Shown in pieces: positions 1 to 18,989 of a DNA stretch of 36,450 nucleotides (positions are counted from its first letter, which is position 1; each line of letters starts with the position of its first letter). The notes under the pieces are model-generated. The model did no database searches. It was not told the DNA's origin and saw only the letters and a program-made list of their open reading frames with translations. Source of the stretch: Macrostomum lignano (lineage: Eukaryota); NCBI GenBank assembly GCA_002269645.1, contig NIVC01004743.1:1-36450 (forward strand), in the 5' to 3' direction. Made by a program: the position numbers and the translations under genes.

Positions 1-2
1 GA

Positions 3-1103
3 GGGGTCGCCTTTTTTGAGATGAATGACGTGGACTTTGTTGCTGGCCTGGTGGCCGCAGCCGAGCAGCCGCTGCCAGACGGAGCCAGCCTGCGCCTGCG
101 GCCCTGCGACGGCGCCGACGGTAGGCGATTCGAACTTCGGACTTCCGGCTGCGACTGTCGCCTGTTTGGCGCCTCCGAGCTCAGCTACTGCATGTGGGAG
201 GGGGAGGCGGTGCAGGTGAGAGCTCAGCTACTGCATGTGGGAGGGGGAGGCGGTGCAGGTGAGAGCTCAGCTACTGCATGTGAGAGGGAGAGGCGGTGCA
301 GGTGAGAGCTCAGCTACTGCATGTGGGAGGGGGAGGCGGTGCAGGTGAGAGCTCAGCTACTGCATGTGGGAGGGGAGGCGGTGCAGGTGAGAGCTCAGCT
401 GCTGCATGTGGGAGGGGGAGGCGGTGCAGGTGAGAGCTCAGCTACTGCATGTGGGAGGGGGAGGCGGTGCAGGTGAGAGCTCAGCTACTGCATGTGAGGG
501 GAGAGGCGGTGCAGGTGAGAGCTCAGCTACTGCATGTGGGAGGGGGAGGCGGTGCAGGTGAGAGCTCAGCTACTGCATGTGGGAGGGGGAGGCGGTGCAG
601 GTGAGAGCTCAGCTACTGCATGTGGGAGGGGGAGGCGGTGCAGGTGAGAGCTCAGCTACTGCATGTGGGAGGGAGAGGCGGTGCAGGTGAGTGCTCATAG
701 GAGGCTTGAGCACAGGAGATGCAGAAACCCGTCAGCTTCCACTGCCAACCCCCAGATCGACTTGTCGGCCGAGAGGCCGGTCTGCGCTGCCGCATCGGAG
801 TGCGGCGCCGTCAGCTCCGCCTCGCTGAAGTGCCTGATGGGCCGCCTGCTGCAGCTGGCCGCTGCCGACAAGCCCACCCTACCGTCGCCGCATATCGTGT
901 GGGTTGACACCGTCGCCAACCGACCGACTTCCGGCGGACTCGATGACCTGCTGATGCGCGCCGGCTTCGAGAACAACACGGCCAATGAAGGCTGGCTGAT
1001 CTGCCTGCTGGCCGGCCGGCCGCTGCACCTGCTGGCCAACAGGCCGCTGAACTGCCGCCTGCACCCGGAGCTGGCCGGCTGCCCGGATTCACTGTCTGAC
1101 TGA
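3..1103 (+). CDS. GNAT/SSAT-like two-domain protein, paralog 1 (5'-partial; exons <3..215 and 756..1103)
   Basis: The frame is open from the window edge (GVAFFEMNDVDFVAG... aligns to IGFFELWPAKFVNS of paralog 2). Donor CAG|GTGAG at 216, acceptor CCCCCAG| at 755, phase 0. The spliced product SYCMWEGEAVQ|IDLSAERPVC...NEGWLICLLAG aligns with paralogs 2-4. Stop TGA at 1101-1103. Confidence 0.85.
180..692 (+). repeat. 43-bp tandem repeat (~12 copies) made of the exon 3' end plus the splice donor
   Basis: Unit CTCAGCTACTGCATGTGGGAGGGGGAGGCGGTGCAGGTGAGAG. GT donors at 216, 259, 302, 345, 387, 430, 473, 515, 558, 601, 644, 687. Confidence 0.95.
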
Positions 1104-1110
1104 GAGAGAT

Positions 1111-1518
1111 GTGAGAGTCCTGATCCCCACTGTGAGAGGCCTGATCCCCACTGTGAAAGTCCTGATCCCCACTGTGAGAGTCCTGATCCCCACTGTGAGA
1201 GTTCTGATCCCCACTGTGAGAGTCCTGATCCCAATGTGAGAGTCTTGATCCCCACTGTGAGAGTCCTGATCCCCACTGTGAGAGTCCTGATCCCCACTGT
1301 GAGAGTCCTGATCCCCACTGTGAGAGTCCTGATCCCCACTTTGAGAGTCCTGATCCCCAATGTGAGAGTCCTGATCCCCACTATGAGAGTCCTGATCCCC
1401 ATTGTGAGAATCCTGATCCCCACTGTGAGAGTCCTGATCCCACTTTGAGAGTCCTGATCCCCATTGTGAGAGTCCTGATCCCCAATGTGAGAGTCCTGAT
1501 CCCCACTGTGAGAGTCCT
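1111..1518. repeat. 21-bp minisatellite, ~19 copies
   Basis: Unit GTGAGAGTCCTGATCCCCACT, beginning ~8 nt after the paralog 1 stop codon. Confidence 0.95.
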
Positions 1519-1949
1519 GTTTACTCATTATCTCCTTATCTCTGATCACAGGTCATCTTAGGGTTCGAGTCCTGACTTTACAGTTGGACCAACGCTAATC
1601 TTCAGTATTTGATTTACTTCTATACTACTATGAGTAGGTTCCGCTTATTCTGGTAATCTTTTATGCAAACTTTAACACAGATCTATCGCTTAGCAGCTCA
1701 AACTAAATCGCTGTTTTAATATATCCTTTTATGCTTAAATTTTAACACTTACACATTGCTCTAACAGTAGTGCGCTGTGCCTAATCCAGTGTAGCTCTCT
1801 TAACGTATCAAGCACTCTACTAACTGATCGCTTGCTGTGCTTAATATGTTCAACTTTATTTTCTGACTTTAACCTGTTTCTTAACAGAAGTTTTAGTTTT
1901 TTGTGGCACTAACCTACCTCACATTACATGCAATGTCCTTGATTCTTGA

Positions 1950-2910
1950 CCCTTGACTAATGAACCATCCTTGTCTCTTATGAACCATCCTTGACTCTTA
2001 TGACCCATCATTGACTCTTATGACCCATCATTGACTCTTATGACCCATCATTGACTCTTATGAACCATCCTTGACTCTTATGACCATCCTTGATTCTCAT
2101 GACCCATCATTGACCCTTATGACTCATCCTTGATTCTCATGACCCATCATTGACTCTTATGAACCATCTTTGACTCTTATGACCCATCCTTGACTCTTAT
2201 GACCCATCATTGACTCTTGTGACCCATCATTGACTCTTATGACCCATCATTGACTCTTATGAACCATCCTTGACTCTTATGACCCATCATTGACTCTTAT
2301 TAACCATCCTTGACTCTTATTAACCATCCTTGACTCTTATGACCCATCCTTGATTCTCATGACCCATCATTGACCCTTATGACCCATCCTTGATTCTCAT
2401 GACCCATCATTGACTCTTATGACCCATCATTGACTCTTATGACCCATCATTGACTCTTATGACCCATCATTGACTCTTATAAATAATCTTTGACTCTTAT
2501 GACCCATCCTTGACTCTTATAAACCATCCTTGACTCTTATGACCATCCTTGATTCTCATGACCCATCATTGACCCTTATGACCCATCCTTGATTCTCATG
2601 ACCCATCATTGACTCTTATGACCCATCATTGACTCTTATGACCCATCATTGACTCTTATGACCCATCATTGACTCTTATAAATAATCTTTGACTCTTATG
2701 ACCCATCCTTGACTCTTATAAACCATCCTTGACTCTTATGAACCATCCTTGATTCTCATGACCCATCCTTGATTCTCATGACCCATCATTGACCCTTATG
2801 ACCCATCCTTGATTCTCATGACCCATCATTGACCCTTATGACCCTTCCTTGATTCTCATGACCCATCATTGACCTTATGACCCATCCTTGATTCTTTTGA
2901 CCCATCCATG
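1950..2910. repeat. 20-bp minisatellite, ~47 copies
   Basis: Unit TGACCCATCATTGACTCTTA with variants (TGATTCTCA, TGAACCATCC). Confidence 0.95.
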
Positions 2911-3064
2911 GCAAGACGTATTTAACTCACCACAATACACGCAAAATTTACTGTCTGCAGCTAATTCTACTTTTAGTAGGCTGTTGCGCCTAGCAAGTCA
3001 AAATGCTTAGAATAAAAAATTATTATTATTAACAACATCCCGCATTTGCAGTCAGCCGGTTGCC

Positions 3065-4359
3065 ATGGAAACTCAGATACAAATTAGACGCGGCACGGCG
3101 GACGACATCGAGGCGGTGGCCGCGCAGGAGCTGGAGCTGGCGAACAGCCACAATGGCATGCAGCTGTACTGCCGGATCGAGTGCGATGAGCACCACCGGA
3201 TGCTGCTGGCCGGCCTGCTCAAACTGCTGGTCGCCGCCGACTGCCAGTCCGGCCGGGTGGTCGGCTTCCTGCTGTACACGCCGTCTTACATGCACAGCCA
3301 GCCCGAGCCCGGCTTCTATGTGCAGAGCCTCTTTGTGGAGCTGGACTACCGGCGGCACAGGGTGAGGCTTCTTGGGGTCCTCAGTGATTGGGCCGCTGCC
3401 TCATTTGGGTCCTCAGTGACTGGGCCGCTGCCTCATTCGGGTCCTCAGTGATTGGGCCGCTGCCTCATTCGGGTCCTCAGTGACTGGGCCACTGCCTCAT
3501 TCGGGTCCTCAGTGACTGGGCCGCTGCCTCATTCGGGTCCTCAGTGACTGGGCCGCTGCCTCATTCGGGTCCTCAGTGACTGGGCCGCTGCCTCATTCGG
3601 TCATCAGTGATTGGGCCGCCAAATCTCGCTGGACCAACTGCAACTCTGGTTGGCAACCCGCAGGTCGGCCAGTCGCTGCTGGCCACGCTGGGCCGCCTCG
3701 CCGCCTCCTCCGGCTTCGGCCACCTGAAGCTGCTGGTGCAGCGCAGCAACGCGCCGGCCGTGAACTGCTACAGACGTCTGGGGTTCGAATTCCTGAGCGA
3801 TACGGAGAACATCGGCTTCTTCGAGCTGTGGCCGGCCAAGTTCGTGAACTCGATGCTTCGGGCGGGTCGCCGGCCGCTGCCCGCCGGCCTCAGCCTGGAG
3901 CTGCGGGACTGCGACGGCCGGCTGTCGGGCGGGCTGGAGGCCGGGCGGCGGTTCGCCCTGACCTGCGCGGCCTGCGACTGCCGCCTTCAGGGCACCGCGG
4001 CGCTCACCTACTGCATGTGGGACGGCTGCATCATGCTGGCCGACCTGCGGCTGGTGCGGCCCGCCTGCGCCCAGCGGCCCTGCCAGCTGCTGAGCGTCGC
4101 CAATCTGAAGCGGCTGCTGGGCCGCCTGGCACTCAGCCTGGCTGCGTCGCCAAGGCGGCTTTGGCTGGAGGCGCCTCGGCAGCAGACCGAGCTGCACCGG
4201 ATGCTGCTGCACACCGGACTGGAGGACTTGGACGGCCGCCACGACGGAGACTGGGTCGTCTGCGCGCTGCGGGGCGCCCAGCTCTGCGGCCTGGCGGAGC
4301 GGCAAGTCGCGGATCATTTTGTGATTGAGGCCGACTGTGCTGCGCCTGCGATTCTGTAG
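3065..4359 (+). CDS. GNAT/SSAT-like two-domain acetyltransferase, paralog 2 (exons 3065..3361, 3664..4359; 330 aa)
   Basis: IRRGTADD...ELA...VVGFLLY...FYVQSLFVELDYRRHR|VGQSLL...LKLLVQRSNAPAVNCYRRLGF is a GNAT fold resembling SAT1/SAT2. Donor AGG|GTGAGG at 3362, acceptor CCGCAG| at 3663, phase 0. The second half has TYCMWDG and GLEDL...DW motifs of a second SSAT-like domain. Confidence 0.88.
3375..3618. repeat. 32-bp intronic minisatellite, ~7.5 copies
   Basis: Unit GGGTCCTCAGTGACTGGGCCGCTGCCTCATTC fills most of the paralog 2 intron. Confidence 0.95.
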
Positions 4360-4900
4360 TGTGCTCAGCAGTGTGCTCAGCAGTGTGCTCAGCAGTGTGC
4401 TCAGCAGTGTGCTCAGTAGTGTGCTCAGCAGTGTGCTCAGCAGTGTGCTCAGTAGTTTGCTCAGCAGTGTGCTCAGCAGTGTGCTTAGTAGTGTGCTCAG
4501 CAGTGTGCTCAGCAGTGTGCTCAGCAGTGTGCTTAGTAGTGTGCTCAGCAGTGTGCTCAGCAGTGTGCTTAGTAGTGTGCTCAGCACTGTGCTCAGCAGT
4601 GTGCTCAGTAGTGTGCTCAGCAGTGTGCTCAGTAGTGTGCTCAGCAGTGTGCTCAGCAGTGTACTCAGTAGTGTGCTCAGCACTGTGCTCATCAGTGTGC
4701 TCAGCAGTGTGCTCAGCACTGTGCTCAGCCGTGTGCTCAGCAGTGTGCTCAGTAGTGTGCTCAGTAGTGTGCTCAGTAGTGTGCTCAGCAGTGTACTCAG
4801 TAGTGTGCTCAGCACTGTGCTCATCAGTGTGCTCAGCAGTGTGCTCAGCACTGTGCTCAGCCGTGTGCTCAGCAGTGTGCTCAGTAGTGTGCTCAGCAGT
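4357..4900. repeat. 12-bp minisatellite, ~45 copies
   Basis: Unit AGCAGTGTGCTC (variant AGTAGTGTGCTC). The first unit overlaps the TAG stop of paralog 2. Confidence 0.95.
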
Positions 4901-5651
4901 GATGCTGAGTTTATTTGCAGTATTGTTTGCAGTTTGCACTAAACCCAGCGTTTATAATCTGGTTGTACTGATTTTATCTATCGAACGCTCTTTCACGCAA
5001 TGGCAATATTTTTTGTATTTCAAGTTGTGAGAGAAACTCTTTTGCAAACCTTTTTTAGCCTCTCTGCTCTCCATCTTTGATTGCGGGACATTGCAACCCT
5101 TCAAAATGCTTTTGTACTTTTGTACAGTATATATATACACTGATTGTACGTATTGCTAGCGACCAGATCCCACACCTTGCTGCTATATCCTACTGCCAAG
5201 TCTCAATCCCCTACCCCCGCACCGGTAAGAAATTCTTTTGTTTGCCCTCAAGTGCAGAGTCTGAGAAGCAGCTCAGAATTGGGAAAGCAGAGTGACGCGC
5301 GGGCTCGCGGAACCGCCTTTTGTCCAAATAAATTTCCTGCTACCTGTCTGATGCAACTGTTAACAATTCAACTATCCGTTGTCCCCAATCGGATGTACTT
5401 TTATTTTGATTAGATTTTATTACCATAAGCAGTACAAATCCTGCGCTGTGCAATAAATTTACTTGTCTGATTAGCTTAGAAAATTGTAATTTTTTTTAGC
5501 TGAGTGCATCGCTTTATTGTATCAAATATCATTAGATATGTTATCCACACAGGCGTGGCAAACTGCAGTTTGTCGTTCGTGTTTTTGTCTGCTCAAGTGA
5601 TTGTATCATTTTCACTGCTATGCCAATGTTTTACAGTTCTCTCTGGTGTCG

Positions 5652-5950
5652 TGCGGGATCTTTTAGGGTGAGATTGTGGGATCTTTTAGGGTGAGATTGT
5701 GGTATATTTTAGGGTGAGATTGTGGATCTTTTAGGGTGAGATTGTGGGATCTTTTAGGGTGAGATTGTGGGATCTTTTCAGTGAGATTGTGGGATCTTTT
5801 AGTGTGAGATTGTGGGATCTTTTAGGGTGAGATTGTGGGATCTTTTAGGTGAGATTGTGGTATATTTTAGGGTGAGATTGTGGATCTTTTAGTGAAATTG
5901 TGGGATCCTTAGGAAGTGAGATTGTGGGATCTTTAGGGAGATTGTGGGAT
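5652..5950. repeat. ~23-bp minisatellite, ~13 copies
   Basis: Unit GGGTGAGATTGTGGGATCTTTTA with indel variants. Confidence 0.9.
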
Positions 5951-6120
5951 ATTTTGGTATGATATTTCGGGGTCTTGGATGCAGCTTTCAAAGGATCTTG
6001 TCAGAACACATCTTGAGCACCTGATCAGTGAAATTTAGGCCAGATTTTGCTTTAAAAAATTTACTGGCTAAAACTTTTCATTCGTTTCTGCATCCGTTGC
6101 CCTAAAACTTTTCCAGCAAA

Positions 6121-7224
6121 ATGTCTGTTGCCATGGTGACTGGCAGTTGCGGCCAGCCGGCCCAGCCAGCGCTGCTCATCAGGCAGGGCGCCCGGAGGAC
6201 CTCCTGGAGGCCGCCGAGCTGGAGGAGGAGCTGGCAGCCTGCCATGACGGCATGCAGCTGTACAGCCGCTGCAGCGCCGTCGAGCACCGCCTCATGATGC
6301 TGGCCGGCCTGCTCAGGCTGCTGGTCGCGGTTGCTATGGCAACCGGCCGGATTGTGGGCTTCGTCCTGTACACCGTGTCTCACGTGTCCCAGCAGGACCT
6401 GCCAGGCCTCTACGTGCAGAGCCTCTTTGTTGACGGGGCTTACCGGAGACACCGGGTGAGTACCGGGTCAGGGATGCTGCGAGTTGTCACTGATTGCAAA
6501 TGGGAATTATTTAATCCTGAGCCTCATCATCCATCTACATCCCACCTGCTGCAGGTCGGCCAGTCGCTGCTGGCCACGCTGGGCCGCCTCGCCGCCTCCT
6601 CCGGCTTCGGCCACCTGAAGCTGCTGGTGCAGCGCAGCAACGCGCCGGCCGTGAACTGCTACAGACGTCTGGGGTTCGAATTCCTGAGCGATACGGAGAA
6701 CATCGGCTTCTTCGAGCTGTGGCCGGCCAAGTTCGTGAACTCGATGCTTCGGGCGGGTCGCCGGCCGCTGCCCGCCGGCCTCAGCCTGGAGCTGCGGGAC
6801 TGCGACGGCCGGCTGTCGGGCGGGCTGGAGGCCGGGCGGCGTTCGCCCTGACCTGCGCGGCCTGCGACTGCCGCCTTCAGGGCACCGCGGCGCTCACCTA
6901 CTGCATGTGGGACGGCTGCATCATGCTGGCCGACCTGCGGCTGGTGCGGCCCGCCTGCGCCCAGCGGCCCTGCCAGCTGCTGAGCGTCGCCAATCTGAAG
7001 CGGCTGCTGGCCGCCTGGCACTCAGCCTGGCTGCGTCGCCAAGGCGGCTTTGGCTGGAGGCGCCTCGGCAGCAGACCGAGCTGCACCGGATGCTGCTGCA
7101 CACCGGACTGGAGGACTTGGACGGCCGCCACGACGGAGACTGGGTCGTCTGCGCGCTGCGGGGCGCCCAGCTCTGCGGCCTGGCGGAGCGGCAGGTCGAC
7201 AGCAACATCCTGGTTGCCGTGTAG
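6121..7224 (+). pseudogene. GNAT/SSAT-like paralog 3, frameshifted (exons ~6121..6455, 6555..7224); pseudogene or assembly errors
   Basis: Exon 1 is homologous to paralogs 2 and 4 but has a 1-nt deletion at ~6190 (LIRQG-x-PEDLL). Exon 2 is identical to paralog 2 exon 2 except single-G deletions at ~6840 and ~7010. Donor CGG|GTGAGT at 6456, acceptor TGCAG| at 6554. Repaired length ~335 aa. Confidence 0.8.
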
Positions 7225-7225
7225 C

Positions 7226-7510
7226 CAGTCTGTAATACTGTCAGTCCGTAATACTGTCTGTCTGTAATACTGTCAGTCTGTAATACTGTCTGTCTGTAAT
7301 ACTGTCAGTCTGTAATACTGTCAGTCTGTAATACTGTCAGTCTGTAATACTGTCAGTCTGTAATACTGTCTGTCTGTAATACTGTCAGTCTGTAATACTG
7401 TCTGTCTGTAACACTGTCAGTCTGTAATACTGTCAGTCTGTAATAATACTGTCAGTCTGTAATACTGTCAGTCTGTAATAATACTGTCAGTCTGTAATAC
7501 TGTCTTTCTG
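7226..7510. repeat. 16-bp minisatellite, ~17 copies
   Basis: Unit CAGTCTGTAATACTGT, starting 1-2 nt after the paralog 3 stop. Confidence 0.95.
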
Positions 7511-7876
7511 TGACACAGGCTTTAATACTGAAAGCTTGCAGCTACTACAGACTTGCACTGTCCATATTTCTTCATAATTAATTTGTATTGCGACTTTCTT
7601 ACTGTATTGCGATTTGCGATTGCGATGTGTTTTACCTTTACTTCAATCAAGCCAGCTGTCTTCGTTTACAGTTCATCAAGTGCTTTTCCAACCAGTTTTT
7701 TTATTCGCTCGATAATCCTGAGATCATTCCTTTGAGCAGATTTTTCTTGACAACTGATTACAGAATGAATTAGATTTTTTAATTCACCTTTTTATCTATT
7801 TTTTTATCCCGATTTGTTTCTTTGGTATCCTTTTATTTTTACTTTTTCGTAAAGCTTTAGTGGGCAGTAAGTGTAG

Positions 7877-7894
7877 GCGTAGTTGTAGTAGTAT

Positions 7895-7993
<99 letters not shown>

Positions 7994-7994
7994 C

Positions 7995-8031
<37 letters not shown>

Positions 8032-8192
8032 CTAGTAGTAGTAGTAGTAGTATTAGTAGTGTAGTAGTAGTAGTATAGTAGTAGTTAGTATAGTAGTAGT
8101 AAATTATAGTAGTAGTTAGTATAGCAGTAGTATATTATAGTAGTAGTTAGTATAGCAGTAGTATATTATAGTAGTAGTTAGTATAGTAGTAG
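7877..8192. repeat. (AGT)n microsatellite degrading into AGTAGTTAGTAT variants
   Basis: Long pure AGT run ending ~40 nt upstream of the paralog 4 ATG. Confidence 0.95.
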
Positions 8193-8230
8193 TCAGCAGC
8201 AGCCATATATTTCACCGCCACCCCGAATTC

Positions 8231-10552
8231 ATGCAGCTGCCAGCAGCCATGAAGCCCGAATCCTCCACCGCCACCGTGGTGATCCGCTACGGCACGCCGG
8301 ATGACATGTACCAGGTGACCTGCCACGAGAAGGAGCTGGCCAAGTGTCACGAAAACATGCTGCAGTACTGCAGGCTGGGCAGCGAGGCGCACCGCCAGAT
8401 GCTCATGGACGGCCTGTTCAGGATTATGGTTGCCGAGGCCGAGGGCCGCGTCATCGGATACCTGCTGTACACCCCCTCCTACCTGCTGCGGCACGCTGAG
8501 CCGGGCTTCTACGTGCAGAGCTTGTACGTTGAGCCGCTGTACCGCAGGCACCAGGTGAGGCGTCCCTCTGTGTGATTGCACTGTGAATGCACTGTGAATG
8601 CACTGTGAATGCACTGTGAATGCACTGTGATTGCACTGTGAATGCACTGTGATTGCACTGTGAATGCACTGTGATTGCACTGTGAATGCACTGTGAATGC
8701 ACTGTGAATGCACTGTGAATGCACTGTGAATGCACTGTGAATGCACTGTGATTGCACTGTGAATGCACTGTGATTGCACTGTGAATGCACTGTGAATGCA
8801 CTGTGAATGCACTGTGAATGCACTGTGATTGCACTGTGAATGCACTGTGATTGCACTGTGAATGCACTGTGATTGCACTGTGAATGCACTGTGATTGCAC
8901 TGTGAATGCACTGTGATTGCACTGTGAATGCACTGTGAATGCACTGTGATTGCACTGTGATTGCACTGTGAATGCACTGTGATTGCACTGTGATTGCACT
9001 GTGAATGCACTTCTATTTGGGGCTGTGGCATAAATTCGCTGCGACTCCAGGCTATCCCACATTTTACTGTAAGAAACAGCATCTCATAATGCTCCACTGC
9101 ACCCCATAATATCCCACTGCACCCCAGAATACCCCACTGCACCCCATATTACCCCACTGCACCCCATAATACCCCACTGCACCCCAGAATACCCCACTGC
9201 ACCCCATATTACCCACTGCATCCCAAAATACCCCACTGCATTCCATAATACCTTACTGCACCCCATAATACCCCACTGCACCCCATAATACCCCACTGCA
9301 TCCCAAAATACCCCACTGCATTCCATAATACCCCACTGCACCCCATAATACCCCACTGCATTCCATAATACCCCACTGCATTCCATAATACCCCACTGCA
9401 CCCATAATACCCCACTGCATTCCATAATACCCCACTGCATCCCAAAATACCCCACTGCACCCCACGGTAGCACGGGGCATATTAAGAAGCCATAAATATC
9501 CCATACAACCAACCAGACCCGCACCGGCCCTCCCGCAGGTCGGCCAGTCGCTGCTGGCCACGCTGGGCCGCCTCGCCGCCTCCTCCGGCTTCGGCCACCT
9601 GAAGCTGTTGGTGCAGCACAGCAACGCGCCAGCCGTGAACTGCTACAGACGTCTGGGGTTCGATTTTCTAACCGAGACGGAGAACATCGGCTTCTTCGAG
9701 CTGTGGCCGCCGAAGTTTATCACTTCAACTCTGCAGGCGGGTCGCCGGCCGCTGCCCGCCGGCCTCCACCTGGAGCTGCGGGACTGCGGCGGCCGGCTGT
9801 CGGGCAAGCTGGACACTGGGCGGCGGTTCGCCCTGACCTGCGCGGCCTGCGACTGCCGCCTGCAGGGCACCGTCGCTCTGACCTACTGTATGTGGGACGG
9901 CCCTGTGGCTCAGGTGAGATTTCTAGATTTCTGATTGGCTCACACCATCTACCCAGTCCAGCTCTGATTGGCTGGCACTATGTACCCAACTCAGCTCTGA
10001 TTGGCTGGCTCTGTACCCAACTCAGCTCTGGTGGGCTGGCACTATGTACCCAGCTCAGCTCTGATTGGCTGGCACTATGTACACAGCTCAGCTCTGATTG
10101 GCTGGCACTATGTACCCAGCTCAGCTCTGATTGGCTGGCACTATGTACCCAGCTCAGCTCTGATTGGCTGGCACTATGTACCCAGCTCAGCTCTGATTCG
10201 CACGCTTCCCTTAAACGCTTTCCAGGCCGACTTGGAGGCGGTTCGGCCGAGCTGTCCGGCCCGCGGCTGCGCCCTGCTGAACGCGGCCAACCTCCGCCGG
10301 CTTTTCGGCCGGCTGCTGCTCACCTGCCTGCCTGTCCGGCCGGTCCGCCTGTGGCTGGAGGCCGGCCGCCGGGACTCCCGGCTGCGCCAGCTGCTCATCA
10401 AGATCGGGCTGGAGGACAGCACGGCCAGCGAGCTGTGGCACGTGTGCGACCTGTCCGGCCCCGGCCTGTCCGAGCTGGCCGGACGCAGCGTGGCCTGTCC
10501 GAGTGTTGGCCGACTGGCCATTGATGCAGGCGCCTTGACAGCGGAGCTTTGA
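8231..10552 (+). CDS. GNAT/SSAT-like two-domain acetyltransferase, paralog 4 (exons 8231..8554, 9539..9913, 10226..10552; ~341 aa)
   Basis: VIRYGTPDD...EKELAK...VIGYLLY...FYVQSLYVEPLYRRHQ|VGQSLL...NCYRRLGF...TYCMWDGPVAQ|ADLEAVRPSC...GLEDSTASELWHVC...LAGR. Both introns are GT-AG and phase 0 (8555-9538, 9914-10225). The start could also be the ATG at 8249. Confidence 0.88.
8571..9010. repeat. 11-bp intronic minisatellite, ~40 copies
   Basis: Unit TGTGA(A/T)TGCAC, in paralog 4 intron 1. Confidence 0.95.
9093..9463. repeat. ~20-bp intronic minisatellite, ~19 copies
   Basis: Unit ACCCCATAATACCCCACTGC with variants. Confidence 0.92.
9930..10197. repeat. 33-bp intronic minisatellite, ~8 copies
   Basis: Unit CAGCTCTGATTGGCTGGCACTATGTACCCAGCT fills paralog 4 intron 2. 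Confidence 0.92.
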
Positions 10553-10715
10553 AGCCCCTGCTTTGTTTTTAGCCGTGTCGTTTTGTGATTGTTTTTGTGT
10601 GGCTCACCAAGCACTGTCTATTGATCCTGTCTGGTTTTAGTTGCTATGCTGGACTCTTTTGTGTTCAGTTTTTATTGCTTATGGTAATACCGATTGATCA
10701 AGGATAAAGTCGCTA

Positions 10716-11645
<930 letters not shown>

Positions 11646-12573
11646 CTATTTTTACACTCTGTCAATATTTAAATTATCTGTGTCAAGCTGGGTTTGGTTT
11701 ACCGCCCAACTCCGCGTCTCACATTCAGTACACTTTAGTGCTGGTTGCATATGCTAAGATGCATTTCCACTTGCGGGTGCTCTGAAAGTCTGCAATCTGG
11801 TCTAATTTGGCCACTGCTATGTGCGGCAGACCCCTCACGCTATTGCCGTACTGTATTAAGCTTTCATCATTGTGACTTGATCTCCCCCTCATGTCTCCGA
11901 TTCGTAACGTCTGCTCGCTCCCTCTGTGTCCGATCTGTTGTCACAGGCATTTTTTACCGCGCTCTGACCGTCTTCAATGCGATCCTTTGCGATTTGTGAT
12001 CCTCAATTTGGGAATTCAATTGTGATTTCGTCTTTATTTACAATAACTCTTGCTTGCTTTACAATTTTGACTTGGTGATAAACATAATTTCCCCTCTACT
12101 GTACTCGTACTTATCTACTAAGTAGTCTGACGCGTAATTTTTTCCAAGCTGTGATTTTTATCAATAAATCGACTAATCGCTTAAAATAAGTTCGTCCTGT
12201 ACTTGTGTGCGACTTTCCAACTTGTTATTGTTTTGCTTCGAGCTGCCGGAACTACCAAATCTATCAAGAATGAACTCAAAGTTTCTTCAAGTGTTTTGAA
12301 AGCACTGGAATGCTAGCCGCGCACTGTGTGTTTATTTTCTTTAGTTTTGTTCCATGGACTGGCCGGTGTGTCTGGCCGGCGCAACACAGCAAATCTGACA
12401 GTCTTGAACTGGGCAAAAAGCGTGTGAAAGAAAGCGGGAAAAAGCAGAGATTAACAAGCAAGTAGTTAAAGTATTTGAGCGAAATAGCAGTGCGACTCAT
12501 GAGGATCCCTCATGAAGCTGGCTGAGTCAGAATGTCACCTGCAGCCTCAGGCGCTGCGGCTGAGGCTGCGATA

Positions 12574-12990
12574 GGATTTTGGGGATTCGATTTTAGGGAT
12601 TCTAAAATGTGGGATTAGATTTTGGGATTCTAAAATGTGGCACTCGATTTTGGGATTCTACAATGTGGGACTCGATTTTGGGATTCTAAAATGTGGCACT
12701 CGATTTTGGGATTCTACAATGTGGGACTCGATTTTGGGATTCTAAAATGTGGGACTCGATTTGGGGATTCTAATAAAATGTGGGATTTGATTTTGGGGAT
12801 TCTAAAATGTGGGATTGGATTTTGTAGATTCTAAAATTTGGGATTGGATTTTGGGATTCTAAAATGTGGGACTCGATTTTGGGATTCTAAAATGTGGGAC
12901 TCGATTTGGGGATTCTAATAAAATGTGGGATTGGATTTTGGGATTCTAAAATGTGGGATTGGATTTTGGGATTCTAAAATGTGGGATTTG
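12574..12990. repeat. ~28-bp minisatellite, ~14 copies
   Basis: Unit GGGATTCTAAAATGTGGGACTCGATTTT with variants. Degenerate copies reappear at ~13565-13600. Confidence 0.9.
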
Positions 12991-13048
12991 TTGGGTTCGA
13001 ATTTGATTTCAGACTGGATTTCGCTTTCACCGAACCTCTGGCTGTCAA

Positions 13049-13561
13049 TCAGTTGTCAACCGACTGTCTCAGCGACTCGTCGATGCTGAGCACCTGCGGC
13101 CGCAGCCGCTGCCGACCCGGCAGCTGGTGGTCGGAGCCGGTGCTGGGCAGGCAGAGGCGCCGGGGCTCGCGCTCCACCAGCCGGCCCTGCCGCTGCTGCT
13201 CGGCGAGGTGCTGCACGGACAGCCGCTGCTCGGACCGCGTCAGCGACTGCTGCAGAGGCGGCGAGGACGAGGCGGAGTCCGGGCCTGCGGCATGCTGGCT
13301 GGCCTGCCGCCTGACGCTGTGCTTTGCCCGCTCCTGTTGAGGCTGCTGCGGACCCTCCGGCTCTGAGCGGAGGCTGGTGACCCGGGGAGTTGCCTTCGGC
13401 TCCCGATGAAGAAGCTCTGATGCTGCTGCGGCTGGTGCGGCTCCTGCAGCGACGGCTGCTTCCTGGGCGTTGACCAGGCCTCGCGCAGGCCGCGGGCTGC
13501 CGCGAGCTGCTCCCAGGACTTGGCGAGCCGCCCGCTGCTGCTGCCGCCGCTTGACGACATT
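13049..13561 (-). CDS. Probable terminal coding exon of an unidentified minus-strand gene (low-complexity Q/S/R-rich protein)
   Basis: GC3-rich island between AT-rich repeats. Acceptor TTTTAGAAACCAG| at 13562 and TGA at 13051-13049. One frame is open across all 513 nt and ends ...RRQASQHAAGPDSASSSPPLQQSLTRSEQRLSVQHL...LSIDESLRQSVDN*. No recognisable domain. Confidence 0.6.
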   Translation of the reverse strand, partial: NVVKRRQQQRAARQVLGAARGSPRPARGLVNAQEAAVAAGAAPAAAASELLHREPKATPRVTSLRSEPEGPQQPQQERAKHSVRRQASQHAAGPDSASSSPPLQQSLTRSEQRLSVQHLAEQQRQGRLVEREPRRLCLPSTGSDHQLPGRQRLRPQVLSIDESLRQSVDN

Positions 13562-13860
13562 CTGGTTTCTAAAATTTGAGATTTGGGATTCCAGACTAAA
13601 CCGTTACGACATATAATTTAGGTTTGGGATTTGGAATAGTGGGTTCTAGATTTGCGATTTAAAATTAGATTGCGGACAATTATTGTCTTTGTGATTCGAG
13701 TTTGAGGTTTGAATTTTTTTAAACCTAGGATTCGGACTTTGAAATGATGGGCTTTTAGGTATACCTGAGTTGGAGATACAGGATGAGACCAGATACTCTT
13801 TGTTGTCAACCTTTGTTGGCCTGTTGTCAGCCTATCCCAATCCACGGTGTGCAACTCTCT

Positions 13861-14668
13861 GACAGACTCCCTGACAGACTTATTGACAGTCTCATTGACA
13901 GACTCCCTGACAGACTTATTGACAGTCTCATTGACAGACTCCCTGACAGACTTATTGACAGTCTCATTGACAGACTCCCTGACAGACTTATTGACAGTCT
14001 CATTGACAGACTCCCTGACAGACTTATTGACAGTCTCATTGACAGACTCCCTGACAGACTTATTGACAGTCTCATTGACAGACTCCCTGACAGACTTATT
14101 GACAGTCTTATTGACAGACTCCCTGACAGACTCGCTGACAGACTTATTGACAGTCTTATTGACAGTCTCATTGTCAGACTTATTGACAGTCTTATTGACA
14201 GTCTCATTGTCAGACTTATTTACAGTCTCATTGACAGTCTCATTGACAGTCTCATTGACAGTCTCATTGACAGACTTATTGACAGTCTCATTGACAGTCT
14301 CATCGACAGACTTATTGACAGACTCCCTGACGACTTATTGACAGTCTCATTGACAGTCTCATTGACAGACTCACTGACAGACTTATTGACAGTCTCATTG
14401 ACAGACTCCCACTCCCTGACAGACTTATTGACGGTCTCACTGACAGACTCCCACTCCCTAACAGACTCAGTAACAGACTCCCTGACAGACTTATTGACAG
14501 TCTCATTGACAGACTCCCTGACAGACTTATTGACAGTCTCATTGACAGAATCCCACTCCCTGACAGACTTATTGACAGTCTCATTAACGGACTCGCTGAT
14601 AGACTCTTAGATAATATTTATGACTACCTGACGGACTACCTGACGGACTACCTGACAGACTACCTGAT
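13861..14668. repeat. 12-bp-based minisatellite with a 36-bp higher-order unit
   Basis: GACAGACTCCCT+GACAGACTTATT+GACAGTCTCATT occurs as ~7 near-perfect 36-mers, then shuffled 12-mers, then CTACCTGACGGA units at ~14623-14668. Confidence 0.95.
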
Positions 14669-14696
14669 AGAAAACTCGAAGTTCTGTTCCGCCTAC

Positions 14697-14748
14697 CTTG
14701 GCAGGCCGCGCCAGGAGTCGCCCTCAGAGTTCTCTAGCCGTTGATGAG
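14697..14748 (-). CDS. Candidate 52-nt internal exon of the minus-strand gene
   Basis: On the minus strand: CCTTCTTTGTGAGCAG| ...HQRLENSEGDSWRGLP... AG|GTAGGC. The phase-2 end joins the 13561 exon as R-MSSSGGSSSGRLAKSWEQL. Upstream exons are not resolved. Confidence 0.3.
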
Positions 14749-15998
14749 CTGCTCACAAAGAAGGATTGATTCGACTGCTGCTGGCAGCTGTCGAGCTGAG
14801 ATGAGGCGTCGCCCGTCTAGGAGTTCAGCTCCCGCCTCAGGCCGGGCCTTATTAAGCGTATCTTGGGTTGCCGGCAGCCCACAGCCAACCAGAGCCGGCA
14901 TCCCTGCATCCCCGCCTGCCCCCAGTGCCTCCTTCCATTGTGCCCCAAACTCTCTGCACTGCAATTCGCATTGCAAGCCGCAGCGGCCGTGACCTGTGCT
15001 GGCTGGGGGTGGGCGAGGCCGCCAGTGAAACTCCTTCCAGCTTCTCTACCTCATCTGTCTGCGTGTTTTTTCTCCGCTCCCTCCCCCCCCCCACCCACCC
15101 AAGAGCTGGCGCAATGCGACTTCCGCAGACATCTGGACTGGATAGAATCCGGACCGACAGGCTCCGAGGCCGACGGCAAGAATTCTTGTACATTTTTGTG
15201 CATCAGAAATCAGCTTAGCAAAGTCTGCAAAATGCGGTTCGGCTCCGCGCAGGGAACCGCTGAACGGGGGAGGACAAAGGGGTCAGCTGCCTCCCCTTCA
15301 GTGAAAATGGGAGGTCAACAAGTTGACATATTGCCGTCAAGCTGGACTCATGCCCCCCCCCCTGGCAAATCAGTTGTTTGGCGGTGCCCGGGTCCATGCC
15401 ACTTTCAAGTTAACGTTATACAGGTTTCTAGTCCAGATGTTCATTCCCGCTAGAAGTCCCTGGCTGTCCCGCGCAATTTGTAGGAGATGTAGGCGAGGGA
15501 TTTCTATTTGGAGGGCTGACGCGGGGTCCGCACTGCATGCTGGAGCAGGGGACGCAGTTTAGTTGAATTCCCTGCAGCCAGAGTTGGCGGTCCGCGGCCC
15601 GCTCCTCACACTCACTCAGCCTCTCTCCTGTTCTTCATCGATAGACTCACAGGCGCCGACAAGGTGAGTTGCCGCCTTGCTGAGGAGGATTGCCCGCAGA
15701 GCAAAAGCAAGTCAGCCTAATAGCATCGCGATTTCCTATCTCTTTGGGCAGGACAAAATCCCACTGGCTTGCCAACTGGCAATGGCATTTTTAATGCATT
15801 TTATACGGCCGCGGCGATTGTAAATTTTTAACTTGGGTCCTCAGAATTTGATCCAGACGGCGGACAGTCATAAATCCCGGATTATCACTTTACTGCGGAG
15901 CCACCTTTGACGTCGGCGCGCTGCACAATTTCTCAATGCAGCGTCCACCCTGTGCAGTTTGATTCATTCCGGAAAATTCTCAGAAAATCCGGCACTTT

Positions 15999-17946
15999 GC
16001 AGAATCTAGCAGATTTCTAGCAGATTTTTAGCAGAATTCTAGCAGATTTCTAGCAGGTTTCTAGCAGATTTCTAGCAGGTTTCTAGCAGGTTTCTAGCAG
16101 ATTTTTACCTGATTTCTAGCAGGTTTCTAGCAGGTTTCTAGCAGGTTTCTAGCAGATTTTTACCTGATTTCTAGCAGGTTTCTAGCAGGTTTCGAGCAGA
16201 TTTCTACCACATTCTAGCAGATTTCTCACAGAATCTATAGCAGATTTCTCACAGAATCTATAGCAGATTTCTCACAGAATCTATAGCAGATTTCTCACAG
16301 ATTCTATAGCAGATTTCTCACAGAATCTATAGCAGATTTCTCACAGAATCTATAGCAGATTTCTCACAGAATCTATAGCAGATTTCTCACAGAATCTATA
16401 GCAGATTTCTCACAGAATCTATAGCAGATTTCTCACAGAATCTATAGCAGATTTCTCACAGAATCCAGCAGATTTCTCACAGAATCTATAGCAGATTTCT
16501 CACAGAATCCAGCAGATTTCTCACAGAATCTATAGCAGATTTCTCAGAATCTATAGCAGATTTCTCACAGAATCTATAGCAGATTTCTCAGAATCTATAG
16601 CAGATTTCTCACAGAATCCAGCAGATTTCTCACAGAATCTATAGCAGATTTCTCACAGAATCTATAGCAGATTTCTCACAGAATCTATAGCAGATTTCTC
16701 ACAGATTCTATAGCAGATTTCTCACAGAATCCAGCAGATTTCTCACAGAATCTATAGCAGATTTCTCACAGAATCTATAGCAGATTTCTCACAGAATCTA
16801 TAGCAGATTTCTCACAGAATCTATAGCAGATTTCTCACAGATTCTATAGCAGATTTCTCACAGAATCTATAGCAGATTTCTCACAGAATCTATAGCAGAT
16901 TTCTCACAGAATCTATAGCAGATTTCTCACAGAATCTATAGCAGATTTCTCACAGAATCTATAGCAGATTTCTCACAGAATCTATAGCAGATTTCTCACA
17001 GAATCTATAGCAGATTTCTCACAGAATCCAGCAGATTTCTCACAGAATCTATAGCAGATTTCTCACAGAATCCAGCAGATTTCTCACAGAATCTATAGCA
17101 GATTTCTCAGAATCTATAGCAGATTTCTCACAGAATCTATAGCAGATTTCTCAGAATCTATAGCAGATTTCTCACAGAATCCAGCAGATTTCTCACAGAA
17201 TCTATAGCAGATTTCTCACAGAATCTATAGCAGATTTCTCACAGAATCTATAGCAGATTTCTCACAGAATCTATAGCAGATTTCTCACAGAATCTATAGC
17301 AGATTTCTCACAGAATCTATAGCAGATTTCTCACAGAATCTATAGCAGATTTCTCACAGATTCTATAGCAGATTTCTCACAGATTCTATAGCAGATTTCT
17401 CACAGAATCTATAGCAGATTTCTCACAGAATCTATAGCAGATTTCTCACAGAATCTATAGCAGATTTCTCACAGATTCTATAGCAGATTTCTCACAGAAT
17501 CTATAGCAGATTTCTCACAGAATCTATAGCAGATTTCTCACAGAATCTATAGCAGATTTCTCACAGAATCTATAGCAGATTTCTCACAGAATCTATAGCA
17601 GATTTCTCACAGAATCTATAGCAGATTTCTCACAGAATCCAGCAGATTTCTCACAGAATCTATAGCAGATTTCTCACAGAATCTATAGCAGATTTCTCAC
17701 AGAATCCAGCAGATTTCTCACAGAATCTATAGCAGATTTCTCACAGAATCTATAGCAGATTTCTCACAGAATCCAGCAGATTTCTCACAGAATCTATAGC
17801 AGATTTCTCAGAATCTATAGCAGATTTCTCACAGAATCTATAGCAGATTTCTCAGAATCTATAGCAGATTTCTCACAGAACCCAGCAGATTTCTCACAGA
17901 TTCTATAGCAGATTTCTCACAGAATCTATAGCAGGTTTCTCACAGT
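15999..17946. repeat. Satellite: 11-bp units (15999-16216) switching to 23-bp units (~75 copies)
   Basis: GCAGATTTCTA, then GCAGATTTCTCACAGAATCTATA with 21-bp deletion variants. Confidence 0.97.
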
Positions 17947-18989
17947 CTCTTTATGGTCAATAATTCGTGAACTGCATAGCAAATTTCTAAAAGATTTCCA
18001 TCCGGCAGGAGTTAACTGCAGGATTTCAACTTCCTCAGGTGCAAGTGACAAGCACAAAAAGTTGCCAAAGCTCAGCACCGCCCACGCACAGCCGCTACCA
18101 GCTTTGGCCTCCCGTGCTCATAAAACTTCTCAAAAATGCAGCGGTTGCACCGCGCCTGTCGGACCAAATTTGGTGATAATTTTTTTGCTTTTCCCGCATA
18201 TCTCCACTCATATCAATAGCCTAAAAAGTCGTGTTCACGCCCACAGAAAAAAGCAACTTGCCGGCGTTTGCAGCGCGTATTAAACTGTCGGAGAGCAGTT
18301 GAATCTCTTGGCGCATTTTGGATTCTTATTGGGTTCGATTCCCCACAGGGAAACCCATTGGTTCAGTCACATTCAAGTATCGGGTGCCGAGCATCTAGAA
18401 ACAGGATGAGTACCGAGTACTCATCCAGCCCTTTGTATAATTTATTTCGCGCAACTACAATTCAATGAGCAAAACCAAAAAGCGCACTGAGGACTTTTCT
18501 TTGTTAATCTTCAACTTCACGGGAAAAATATCGCTTTTTGAAAGTTAATTTCCTGCCTTTTCTGGGAAATATTTTAGGTTGTGAATATTACTTTTAAAGT
18601 TTCAATCCTTTATCAAAACTTTTGAAACATCAAAACTTTTGAACATCAAAACTTCAGTTGCGATTTTTTATTATAAATTACTCGTCAAAACTAGATTAAA
18701 AACGAGTACAGAGTCCCCTGCTGGGGATCATCTTTCTAAAGCTCCCCGGCCCTGCAAGCTGTCAAGCAGATCAAGCCTTCGCATCTGTTGTCAACCTTTG
18801 AAAATCAACCGGCTGAGGTTCGAACCCATCAATGCAACCCATTTTTTATTAGAGGCAGGGGGTTGTGTGCACCCTGGCGCACTTTAAGCGACATGGGCAC
18901 ACAACCGGCGAGAGGCATTACTGCCCATTCCGCCGACTCCCCTGAGCAGGCATACAAGCGCGCGGATACGTACGCAGGCACACACTCAC

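What the first reader, a model, noticed from the sequence alone, without database searches (positions are those of the whole stretch)
3..10552. Tandem family of single-chain SSAT-like pseudo-dimers with complementary half-sites
Seen: each ~330-340 aa paralog has two SSAT-like domains. The N-domain keeps the motif A region (YRRH[RQ]VG), N-x-x-A-V-N-C-Y (the catalytic Tyr position) and LGF, but has lost the Y-x-x-W-x-G loop and the EGW arm. The C-domain has lost helices 1-2, motif A and the Tyr, yet retains [TS]YCMW[DE]G and the tail (GFENNTANEGWLIC, GLEDSTASELWHVC...LAGR), which resembles the SAT2 tail GAQDLTEAEGWHFF...LAGK. Established: SSAT/SAT1 is an arm-swapped homodimer whose acceptor site is completed by the partner subunit, including the W-containing loop and C-terminal arm. 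Inference: the fusion encodes one asymmetric active site, with the N-domain binding acetyl-CoA and the dead C-domain supplying the partner elements. I do not recognise this as a described family.
Basis: partly seen in the sequence, partly recalled or inferred. Interest (0 to 1): 0.78.

Follow-up and report, generated by a model that had tools for sequence, protein, structure and literature searches.

The report
Flatworm two-domain SSAT-like acetyltransferase gene array
A flatworm (Macrostomum lignano) carries four tandem genes, each encoding an SSAT/NATA1-type acetyltransferase domain fused to a second, degenerate copy of the same fold; this repeats a design known from other enzymes and is found only in this species so far.

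Summary
Window 3-10552 (+ strand, Macrostomum lignano) carries four spliced paralogs, A-D, of about 330-347 aa. A is cut by the window edge. C has three 1-bp homopolymer deletions in its exons here and is intact on three other contigs.

- **N half:** a clear SSAT/NATA1-type GNAT domain (Pfam 7e-12; best PDB hits NATA1, thialysine acetyltransferase, SSAT1/2).
- **C half:** invisible to Pfam, PDB sequence search and a 1.84-billion-protein profile search, which returned only M. lignano sequences. It does align colinearly, from beta3 to the C-terminus, with an SSAT2+NATA1 profile (hhalign P 8e-5; z 9.7 against column shuffles). An AlphaFold model with no homolog rows over that half gives GNAT strand/helix order minus helices 1-2 (pLDDT 65-83).
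- **Selection:** both halves are under purifying selection between locus copies (15 synonymous : 2 nonsynonymous changes).

The "degenerate second SSAT-like domain" reading is therefore supported. The "complementary half-sites in SSAT dimer geometry" reading is untested and partly weakened. The N-domain loop without Trp is simply NATA1-type. The N domain carries Gln at the general-base position (E92) and lacks the first P-loop Gly. Model pTM is only 0.54.

Single-chain two-GNAT enzymes are already known (MshD, NMT, FemA). This is a new, lineage-restricted variant of moderate interest.

The parts
3..215 (+). Gene A, exon 2 (partial; the gene's 5' part lies outside the window). It covers the end of the N domain and beta1'-beta3' of the C half, ending ...SYCMWEGEAVQ|gt.
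   Evidence: Translation. 98.6% identical without gaps to L001 2791-3003, within a called 347-aa gene. The full-length A-type protein is P0007.
177..697 (+). 43-bp minisatellite (12.2 copies) that starts inside gene A exon 2 and fills most of intron 2. Each unit repeats the exon end (ELSYCMWEGEAVQ) plus the GT donor.
   Evidence: TRF; sequence; frame translation.
756..1103 (+). Gene A, exon 3. It covers beta4' to the tail of the C half (…GFENNTANEGWLICLLAGR…) and the stop codon.
   Evidence: Acceptor cccag|ATCGAC. 100% identical to L001 3415-3762.
3065..3361 (+). Gene B, exon 1. It covers N-domain beta1 through the start of motif A (…LDYRRHR|gt).
   Evidence: The protein is 100% identical to P0001.
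3664..3861 (+). Gene B, exon 2, first part: the rest of the N domain (P-loop variant VGQS, SNAPAVNCY with the catalytic Tyr, the tail ENIGFFELW and the linker).
   Evidence: Pfam Acetyltransf_1 over residues 56-140, E 6.8e-12. PDB hits to NATA1, SSAT and related chains.
3862..4359 (+). Gene B, exon 2, second part: the C half (degenerate GNAT-like domain). It is contiguous with the N domain in the same exon, with no second intron, and includes the stop codon.
   Evidence: Continuous ORF. hhalign and shuffle tests.
6121..6455 (+). Gene C, exon 1. A 1-bp deletion at 6191 in a C run shifts the frame in this window.
   Evidence: The intact counterpart is P0002.
6555..7224 (+). Gene C, exon 2 (N-domain end plus C half, no second intron). 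It is 99.5% identical to gene B exon 2. 1-bp deletions at 6841 and 7009 in G runs shift the frame in this window.
8231..8554 (+). Gene D, exon 1 (ATG at 8231 or 8249).
   Evidence: It is near-identical to P0004 and 99.3% identical to the L001 copy of this exon.
9539..9913 (+). Gene D, exon 2: N-domain motif A to tail, the linker, and beta1'-beta3' of the C half, ending …TYCMWDGPVAQ|gt.
10226..10552 (+). Gene D, exon 3: beta4' to the tail of the C half (…GLEDSTASELWHVCDLSGPGLSELAGR…) and the stop codon.
   Evidence: The tail matches SAT2 with z 6.8.

Best explanation
This is a Macrostomum-restricted tandem array of four paralogous spliced genes.

Each gene encodes one polypeptide with two GNAT-type halves. 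The N half is an SSAT/NATA1-family acetyltransferase domain. It keeps the acetyl-CoA-binding core (beta4-alpha3-beta5-alpha4) and the catalytic Tyr. The C half is a second SSAT-type GNAT copy that arose by internal duplication or by fusion of two SSAT-like genes. It has lost helices alpha1-alpha2, the pyrophosphate P-loop and the Tyr, so it very probably cannot bind acetyl-CoA or catalyse transfer.

SSAT-family enzymes are obligate intertwined homodimers whose acceptor pocket is lined by both subunits. The most likely role of the C half is therefore a built-in, non-catalytic partner subunit, giving a single-chain pseudo-dimer with one acetyl-CoA site and one acceptor pocket for a small amine (diamine, polyamine or basic amino acid type).

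What is shown: the gene models; the single chain; SSAT/NATA1 membership of the N half; SSAT-type homology and GNAT-like secondary-structure order of the C half; and purifying selection on both halves.

What is inferred: loss of CoA binding by the C half; intramolecular pairing; the asymmetric single active site; and the substrate class.
For: - **Single chain:** in B and C the N-domain end and the whole C half are one exon without a stop in B. The annotated proteins P0001, P0002 and P0004 match the models.
- **N half:** Pfam Acetyltransf_1 at 6.8e-12. Best PDB sequence hits are NATA1-like/GNAT8 at 3e-11, thialysine acetyltransferase at 1.5e-8, SSAT1 at 1e-6 and SAT2 at 3e-4. hhalign against SAT2 gives P 2.4e-15. 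Foldseek top hits are 2fe7, NATA2 and SSAT. The Tyr is kept (NCY in B, C and D; SWY in A).
- **C half, sequence:** hhalign against a mammalian SAT2 profile gives P 0.002 over 97 colinear columns, with 0 of 300 column shuffles reaching the score. Against an SAT2+NATA1 profile it gives P 8.3e-5, probability 61% and score 34, against a shuffle mean of 12.4 +/- 2.2 with maximum 19.6, z 9.7. MAFFT places homolog tails on the C-half tail.
- **C half, structure:** AlphaFold model 2 had homolog rows on the N domain only. It gives the C half pLDDT 65-83 and the element order b1'178-184, b2'196-203, b3'209-219, b4'223-233, a3'247-261, b5'268-273, a4'278-286, b6'299-302.
- **Constraint:** between the window and the diverged locus copy L001 the counts are N half 7 synonymous: 0 nonsynonymous (P 5e-5) and C half 8: 2 (pN/pS 0.10, P 9e-4).
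- **Background:** SSATs are intertwined obligate dimers with pocket residues from both chains (bioRxiv 10.1101/2024.03.04.583282; PMC4964394). There is precedent for an inactive GNAT domain completing the substrate site in MshD.
Against: - The inter-domain arrangement is not confidently predicted (pTM 0.54), and I could not superpose the model on an SSAT dimer.
- No Foldseek query of the C half alone was possible, and all top 50 hits are single GNAT chains with TMq <= 0.40.
- Standard searches do not see the C half: Pfam gives 0 families, PDB phmmer/hmmsearch gives no GNAT, and the C half against its own N half gives P 0.13.
- The N domain deviates from active SSATs. It has Gln-Ser (Gln-Ala in A) where SSAT has E92-D93, and the P-loop is R-R-H-[RQ]-V-G (R-G-L-K-V-G in A), so the first Gly is lost. 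Catalysis is therefore not assured.
- The N domain keeps its own beta6-like tail (IGFFEL), so it might still homodimerise.
- Between paralogs, dN/dS in the distal C half is about 0.8, which indicates weak long-term constraint.
Confidence: 0.55

Rival explanations
1. The N domains still homodimerise like ordinary SSAT/NATA1 enzymes. The C half is an accessory or regulatory module rather than the partner subunit, for example a cysteine-rich metal- or redox-sensing domain, or a second ligand-binding site.
For: The N domain keeps a complete GNAT element set, including its own beta6 tail. pTM 0.54 gives no confident N-C packing. The C half has seven Cys invariant across all four paralogs (B numbering C182, C203, C205, C216, C234, C239, C299), even though dN/dS there is 0.7-0.8.
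Against: The C half retains exactly those SSAT elements that line the dimer interface and acceptor pocket: the beta3-beta4 Trp loop and the W-x-V-C-x-L-x-G tail. No metal-binding family was detected.
Confidence: 0.25
2. The proteins are pseudoenzymes. Neither half catalyses acetyl transfer, and the proteins bind or sequester a small amine or CoA derivative, or act as scaffolds.
For: The N domain naturally carries Gln at the position of general base E92. The review PMC4964394 cites the E92Q substitution as showing that E92 is essential in mouse SSAT. The first P-loop Gly is replaced by Arg, Gln or Lys. The C half lacks both the Tyr and the P-loop.
Against: Many GNATs work without a dedicated general base and tolerate atypical P-loops (PMC4964394). 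The catalytic Tyr and the beta4-alpha3-beta5-alpha4 core are conserved in all paralogs. The N half shows strong recent purifying selection (7 synonymous: 0 nonsynonymous).
Confidence: 0.15
3. The C half is an unrelated, fast-evolving lineage-specific extension, or the genes are decaying, and the SSAT-like motifs are chance.
For: No Pfam or PDB sequence hit and no homolog outside M. lignano among 1.84 billion representatives. Between-paralog dN/dS is about 0.8 in residues 221-316. Copy C is frameshifted in this window.
Against: The hhalign score is z 9.7 above column shuffles and colinear over 89 columns. AlphaFold gives GNAT-order secondary structure without homolog rows over the C half. The C half shows 8 synonymous: 2 nonsynonymous changes between locus copies (P 9e-4). 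Copy C is intact on three other contigs and differs from the closest (L003) only by homopolymer deletions.
Confidence: 0.05

Closest known systems
Spermidine/spermine N1-acetyltransferase family: animal SSAT1/SAT2 (thialysine acetyltransferase), plant NATA1/NATA2, bacterial 2fe7-type
   Same: The N half is a sequence-level member. It has the catalytic Tyr, the N-x-P-[AS]-[VI]-N-x-Y motif and a NATA1-type beta3-beta4 loop (PGFY). The C half aligns from beta3 to the C-terminus, with the SAT2-type Y-x-x-W-x-G loop and a NATA1/SAT2-type tail (W-x-V-C-x-L-x-G...LAG[RK]).
   Different: Known members are ~170-230-aa single-domain obligate homodimers, whereas this family has two copies on one chain. 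The N half has Gln at E92 and lacks the first P-loop Gly. The NATA-type di-arginine pocket is absent from the N half (His, Glu), and the C-half tail has Asp, Ala or Leu where NATA2 has R222. The C half lacks alpha1-alpha2, the P-loop and the Tyr.
Mycothiol synthase MshD (actinobacteria)
   Same: It is a monomer with two GNAT domains on one chain. One domain is catalytically inactive yet contributes residues to the single acceptor site between the domains (PMC4964394). This is the same design logic proposed here.
   Different: In MshD the active domain is C-terminal, both domains still bind acetyl-CoA, and the lineage is unrelated. The NCBIfam MshD model scores only 15.5 bits against a cut-off of 163.
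N-myristoyltransferase (NMT) and FemA/FemX
   Same: Both are monomeric enzymes with two GNAT folds. NMT has internal two-fold symmetry, which the review attributes to gene duplication, and very little residual sequence identity between its halves (PMC4964394). This matches the C half against N half result here (P 0.13).
   Different: They use different acyl donors and acceptors (myristoyl-CoA and peptides; aminoacyl-tRNA). They are much larger, ancient and widespread families, and are not SSAT-like.

Membership tests
GNAT superfamily (Pfam Acetyltransf_1 and related) | A profile match above the curated threshold | tested here: met
   N half: PF00583 at 46.1 bits against a cut-off of 20.7, plus PF13508 and PF13673. 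The C half alone matches 0 families at E <= 1.
GNAT superfamily | A second GNAT fold in the C half (b1-[a1-a2]-b2-b3-b4-a3-b5-a4-b6 topology) | tested here: inconclusive
   AlphaFold secondary-structure order fits GNAT minus a1/a2 at pLDDT 65-83. hhalign against SSAT-family profiles gives P 8.3e-5 and z 9.7. No 3D comparison of the C half alone was possible.
SSAT / NATA1 family | Closer to SSAT-family members than to other GNATs | tested here: met
   N half: the top PDB sequence hits are NATA1-like/GNAT8, NATA1, thialysine acetyltransferase, 2fe7 and SSAT1/2. The Foldseek top hit is 2fe7 at 32% identity.
SSAT / NATA1 family | Catalytic general acid Tyr (hSSAT Y140) | tested here: met
   N half: NCY (B, C, D) or SWY (A), aligned to the Y of SAT2 and NATA1. 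C half: Leu at that position.
SSAT / NATA1 family | General base Glu on beta4 (hSSAT E92) | tested here: not met
   N half: Gln (FYVQS in B, C, D; LYLQA in A), aligned to YLED of SAT2 and YIED of NATA1. The C half has an invariant Asp at the aligned column (ADL or IDL).
SSAT / NATA1 family | P-loop R/Q-x-x-G-x-G/A | tested here: not met
   N half: R-R-H-[R/Q]-V-G (B, C, D) and R-G-L-K-V-G (A). The first Gly is replaced. The C half has no recognisable P-loop.
SSAT / NATA1 family | Obligate intertwined homodimer with strand exchange | not testable with these tools
   This needs coordinates or solution data. Only pTM 0.54 is available.
NATA1/bacterial SSAT subtype | Di-arginine at the back of the acceptor pocket (NATA2 R191 and R222', one from each chain) | tested here: not met
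   I mapped R191 and R222 from the numbering of the alignment and. The N half has His at R191 (GFGHLK) and Glu at R222 (FFELW). The C-half tail has Asp (D), Ala (B, C) or Leu (A) at R222.
Single-chain two-GNAT enzymes (MshD / NMT / FemA type architecture) | Two GNAT-type halves on one polypeptide | tested here: met
   Continuous exon in B. N half by Pfam; C half by profile-profile comparison and AlphaFold secondary structure. Confidence for the C-half fold is moderate.
Mycothiol synthase MshD (TIGR03448) | A profile match above the curated cut-off | tested here: not met
   15.5 bits against a cut-off of 163.1, on the N half only.

The most novel reading that the evidence does not exclude
An obligate SSAT/NATA1-type homodimer has been converted, within the Macrostomum lineage, into a single-chain asymmetric pseudo-heterodimer. 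One half keeps acetyl-CoA chemistry. The other half is a cysteine-rich, rapidly diversifying 'specificity subunit'. Its pocket-lining tail residue differs between paralogs (Asp, Ala or Leu at the NATA2 R222 position), so the four-gene array would encode enzymes with different amine specificities. The array might work together with the three organic-cation-transporter-like genes about 10 kb downstream as a lineage-specific module for detoxifying or exporting cationic metabolites.
Probability: 0.15. Interest if true: 0.55.

Novelty: new variant of a known kind. Interest (0 to 1): 0.4.

Why it matters
If the pseudo-dimer reading holds, this family shows how an obligate homodimeric small-molecule acetyltransferase becomes an asymmetric single-chain enzyme. 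The same route is inferred for MshD and NMT, but in those families the sequence trace of the duplication is largely erased. Here the degenerate half still aligns to the parent family, and four paralogs sample its divergence. That could make the family a workable system for studying subfunctionalisation of dimer halves. In practice the genes are annotated only as hypothetical or GNAT-domain proteins, and the second domain is invisible to Pfam. The scope is narrow: one flatworm species so far, and no functional data.

Tried and rejected
- Pfam on the isolated C half found nothing.
- PDB sequence searches with the C-half profile and with the single C halves of A and D returned only chance hits (a c-di-GMP-binding protein and an FAS DH domain) or nothing.
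- My first hhalign of C half against N half matched only the 11 residues I had left overlapping in the two alignments. That was an artefact. Redone without the overlap it gives P 0.13.
- AlphaFold with only the four paralogs as alignment gave pLDDT 48 and was unusable.
- A MAFFT alignment with full-length SAT2 and NATA1 homologs split each homolog between the N-domain core and the C-half tail. I did not use it for modelling because it would have imposed a contact. I used tail-truncated homologs instead.
- Foldseek on the full model returned only single-domain GNATs, and there is no way to query the C half alone or to see query ranges.
- The pseudogene reading of copy C is rejected as unlikely. 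Against L003 its only differences are four homopolymer deletions, and the copy is intact on three other contigs.
- Literature searches for the locus tags and for Macrostomum SSAT-like genes found nothing. A search for 'tandem GNAT / pseudo-dimer' returned irrelevant papers.
- Exact-protein look-up of the first MFS ORF found no record.
- tRNA and Rfam scans of the window found nothing.

Full report
**1. What is in the window**

The window is genomic DNA of the free-living flatworm Macrostomum lignano. Gene B translates 100% identically to NCBI 'hypothetical protein BOX15_Mlig012588g2'. The window is 99.6% identical over 14 kb to contig NIVC01004736.1 of assembly GCA_002269645.1.

Between 3 and 10552, on the + strand, lie four paralogous genes with GT-AG introns.
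- A: 3-215 + 756-1103. Its 5' part lies outside the window.
- B: 3065-3361 + 3664-4359, 330 aa.
- C: 6121-6455 + 6555-7224.
- D: 8231 or 8249-8554 + 9539-9913 + 10226-10552, 341 or 335 aa.

These models rest. tblastn finds no further copy in the window. Introns and spacers are filled with minisatellites.

The same A-B-C-D array, called as intact genes of 347, 334, 336 and 339-340 aa, is present on three other contigs (L001, L002, L003).

Copy C in this window carries single-base deletions in homopolymer runs at 6191, 6841 and 7009 (exons) and 6541 (intron). Against L003 these are its only differences. The other three contigs have C intact. An assembly error is therefore more likely than a pseudogene.

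**2. The observation**

The single-chain architecture does not depend on splicing. In B, the end of the N domain, the linker and the whole C half are one uninterrupted exon.

**3. The N half**

- Pfam Acetyltransf_1 scores 46 bits, E 6.8e-12.
- The best solved relatives by sequence are plant NATA1-like/GNAT8 (3e-11), NATA1, a thialysine acetyltransferase, P. aeruginosa 2fe7, SSAT1 (1e-6) and SAT2.
- hhalign against an SAT2 profile gives P 2.4e-15.
- Foldseek on the model puts 2fe7 first at 32% identity, and NATA2, NATA1 and SSAT are in the list.

The N half is therefore an SSAT/NATA1-family domain. It keeps the general-acid Tyr (hSSAT Y140; PMC4964394).

- The Trp-less beta3-beta4 loop (YTPSY..EPGFY) is the NATA1-type loop (PNYSSFLSKPGFY), not a special loss.
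- The position of the general base E92 is Gln in all paralogs. The review cites E92Q as showing that this residue is essential in mouse SSAT.
- The first Gly of the P-loop is Arg, Gln or Lys.

Residue numbering of human SAT1 is from my memory of the sequence. It is consistent with the E92 and Y140 numbering used in the review.

**4. The C half**

Ordinary searches see nothing.
- Pfam finds no family.
- PDB phmmer and hmmsearch find no GNAT.
- A profile search of 1.84 billion representative proteins returned six hits. Five are M. lignano entries or near-identical to the window's genes, and the sixth is a frame-shifted read-through of these genes, so I take all six to be M. lignano sequences.

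Targeted tests do support SSAT-type homology.
- Smith-Waterman of the D C half against SAT2 gives z 6.8 over the last 38 residues. It proved 95% identical to the macaque SAT2 cluster.
- hhalign of the four-sequence C-half profile against 65 mammalian SAT2 sequences gives P 0.002 over 97 colinear columns. C-half positions 40-144 align to SAT2 positions 73-170, which is beta3 to the C-terminus. None of 300 column shuffles reached the score.
- Adding plant NATA1 fragments to the target profile raises this to P 8.3e-5, probability 61% and score 34.0. The shuffle mean is 12.4 +/- 2.2 with maximum 19.6, so z is 9.7.
- MAFFT spontaneously aligned the tails of SAT2 and NATA1 homologs to the C-half tail (WRVCRLTGDAL against WHVCDLSGPGL) rather than to the N-domain tail.

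C half against its own N half is not significant (P 0.13). NMT shows the same pattern between its two halves.

**5. Structure**

AlphaFold with only the four paralogs as alignment failed (pLDDT 48).

The second run gave homolog rows to the N domain only, using tail-truncated SAT2 and NATA1 sequences, so nothing was imposed on the C half. It gave mean pLDDT 73.5. The C half scored 65-83 up to about residue 290.

The C-half element order is b1' 178-184, b2' 196-203, b3' 209-219, b4' 223-233, a3' 247-261, b5' 268-273, a4' 278-286, b6' 299-302. This is the GNAT order without helices alpha1-alpha2, and it agrees with the hhalign register.

pTM is 0.54, so the relative placement of the two halves is not confidently predicted. 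I could not access coordinates or query the C half alone. All top 50 Foldseek hits are single GNAT chains. The SSAT-dimer-geometry claim therefore remains untested.

**6. Constraint**

Between paralogs, dN/dS is 0.49 for the N half (B against D) and 0.68-0.77 for the C half. It is about 0.8 for residues 221-316. That indicates rapid divergence after duplication.

Between the window and the diverged locus copy L001, non-coding DNA is about 92-98% identical and exons are 98.6-100% identical without gaps. Across A, B and D there are 15 synonymous and 2 nonsynonymous differences. The N half has 7:0 (P 5e-5). The C half has 8:2 (pN/pS 0.10, P 9e-4). Both halves are therefore currently maintained as protein.

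**7. Mechanism**

SSAT-family enzymes are intertwined obligate dimers. They exchange beta7. Both chains line the acceptor pocket, for example the di-arginine pair in NATA1/2.

The most economical reading is that the degenerate C half replaces the second subunit. The N half would bind acetyl-CoA and supply the Tyr. The C half cannot bind CoA because it has no P-loop, no alpha1-alpha2 and no Tyr. It would complete the fold and the pocket.

By my mapping, the NATA2 R222 tail position is Asp (D), Ala (B, C) or Leu (A) in the C half. The R191 position is His in the N half. The NATA-type di-arginine pocket is therefore absent, and the partner-side residue varies between paralogs. That would fit diversification of substrate specificity, but this is inference.

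An unexpected point is that the acidic residue at the E92 column is invariant in the C half and absent from the N half. In known SSATs, as far as I recall, E92 and Y140 serve the same site. This does not fit a simple 'complementary half-site' picture.

Seven Cys are invariant in the C half. This is unexplained.

The rivals are N-N homodimers with an accessory C half, pseudoenzymes, and a chance resemblance. They are scored separately in the Rival explanations section.

**8. Comparison and novelty**

By sequence the N half belongs to the SSAT/NATA1 family. It fails two of that family's catalytic-motif features (E92 and the P-loop Gly).

By architecture the proteins join the known class of single-chain two-GNAT enzymes: MshD, NMT and FemA (PMC4964394). 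They are not members of any of those families. The MshD model scores 15.5 bits against a cut-off of 163.

No paper mentions these genes. I rate this a new variant of a known kind, seen only in M. lignano among the databases searched. Those databases may simply lack other macrostomids.

**9. Context**

About 10 kb downstream are three tandem intron-less ORFs of 502-510 aa. Their best match is the organic-cation-transporter family TIGR00898 (5e-54 to 8e-55, below the curated cut-off; also Pfam Sugar_tr and MFS_1). A functional link with amine acetyltransferases is conceivable but was not tested.

Noticed in passing
window 177-697: A 43-bp minisatellite (12.2 copies, 96% matches) starts inside gene A exon 2. 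Each unit duplicates the exon's last 13 codons (ELSYCMWEGEAVQ) together with the GT donor, so intron 2 begins with about 12 tandem copies of a 5' splice site. Only the first donor keeps the frame without a stop. The array is also present in L001.
   Followed up: partly
window 3664-4359 vs 6555-7224, and 3065-3361 vs 6121-6455: Exon 2 of B and exon 2 of C are 99.5% identical (647 of 650 aligned positions), starting exactly at the splice acceptor, whereas their exon 1 sequences are only about 75% identical. B and C also both lack the intron after YCMWDG that A and D have. This points to gene conversion, or replacement by an intron-less (cDNA-like) segment. B against D likewise shows low dS (0.14-0.23) for codons 100-220, against 0.7-0.8 on either side.
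   Followed up: partly
window 6191, 6541, 6841, 7009: There are four single-base deletions, each in a C or G homopolymer run, and three of them shift the frame of gene C. Against L003 they are the only differences in this 1.2-kb stretch. C is intact in L001, L002 and L003. This is probably a long-read assembly artefact.
   Followed up: yes
window 20688-22220, 29658-31190, 32216-33724 (+): Three tandem, apparently intron-less ORFs of 510, 510 and 502 aa encode MFS transporters. Their best match is the organic cation transporter family (TIGR00898, E 5e-54 to 8e-55, below the curated cut-off; also Pfam Sugar_tr and MFS_1). They lie about 10 kb downstream of the acetyltransferase array on the same strand.
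   Followed up: partly
window 25188-26159 (+): A 323-aa ORF lies between MFS copies 1 and 2 and has a weak QRICH1-domain match (PF25561, E 5.7e-5, 23.6 bits against a cut-off of 30.8). It may be part of a mobile-element-derived gene.
   Followed up: no
window 1-16000: Almost every intron and intergenic spacer is occupied by a different minisatellite (periods 9-43 bp, up to 96 copies, for example 10743-11608 with a 9-bp unit and 1960-2907 with a 20-bp unit). These arrays create most of the long spurious ORFs in the mechanical ORF list.
   Followed up: partly
C half of genes A-D (gene B residues 182, 203, 205, 216, 234, 239, 299): Seven cysteines are invariant across all four paralogs in the C half (RDC, CDCRL, YCMW, RPxC(x4-5)C, WxxC), in a region that otherwise diverges fast. 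The N half has no comparable set. A possible metal or redox site was not tested.
   Followed up: no
L001 (NIVC01000731.1), L002 (NIVC01004736.1), L003 (NIVC01005044.1): The whole locus occurs at least four times among the sequences seen. Two contigs are about 99.6% identical to the window, and one copy on a 459-kb contig has 92-98% identical non-coding DNA. This is consistent with haplotigs plus a duplicated-chromosome copy in M. lignano. A RhoGAP-domain gene lies upstream of the array in L002 and L003.
   Followed up: partly
window 16001-18000 and 34001-36000: There is an AT-rich stretch (GC 0.36) at 16-18 kb and a region of extreme GC skew (-0.52) at 34-36 kb. Neither was examined.
   Followed up: no
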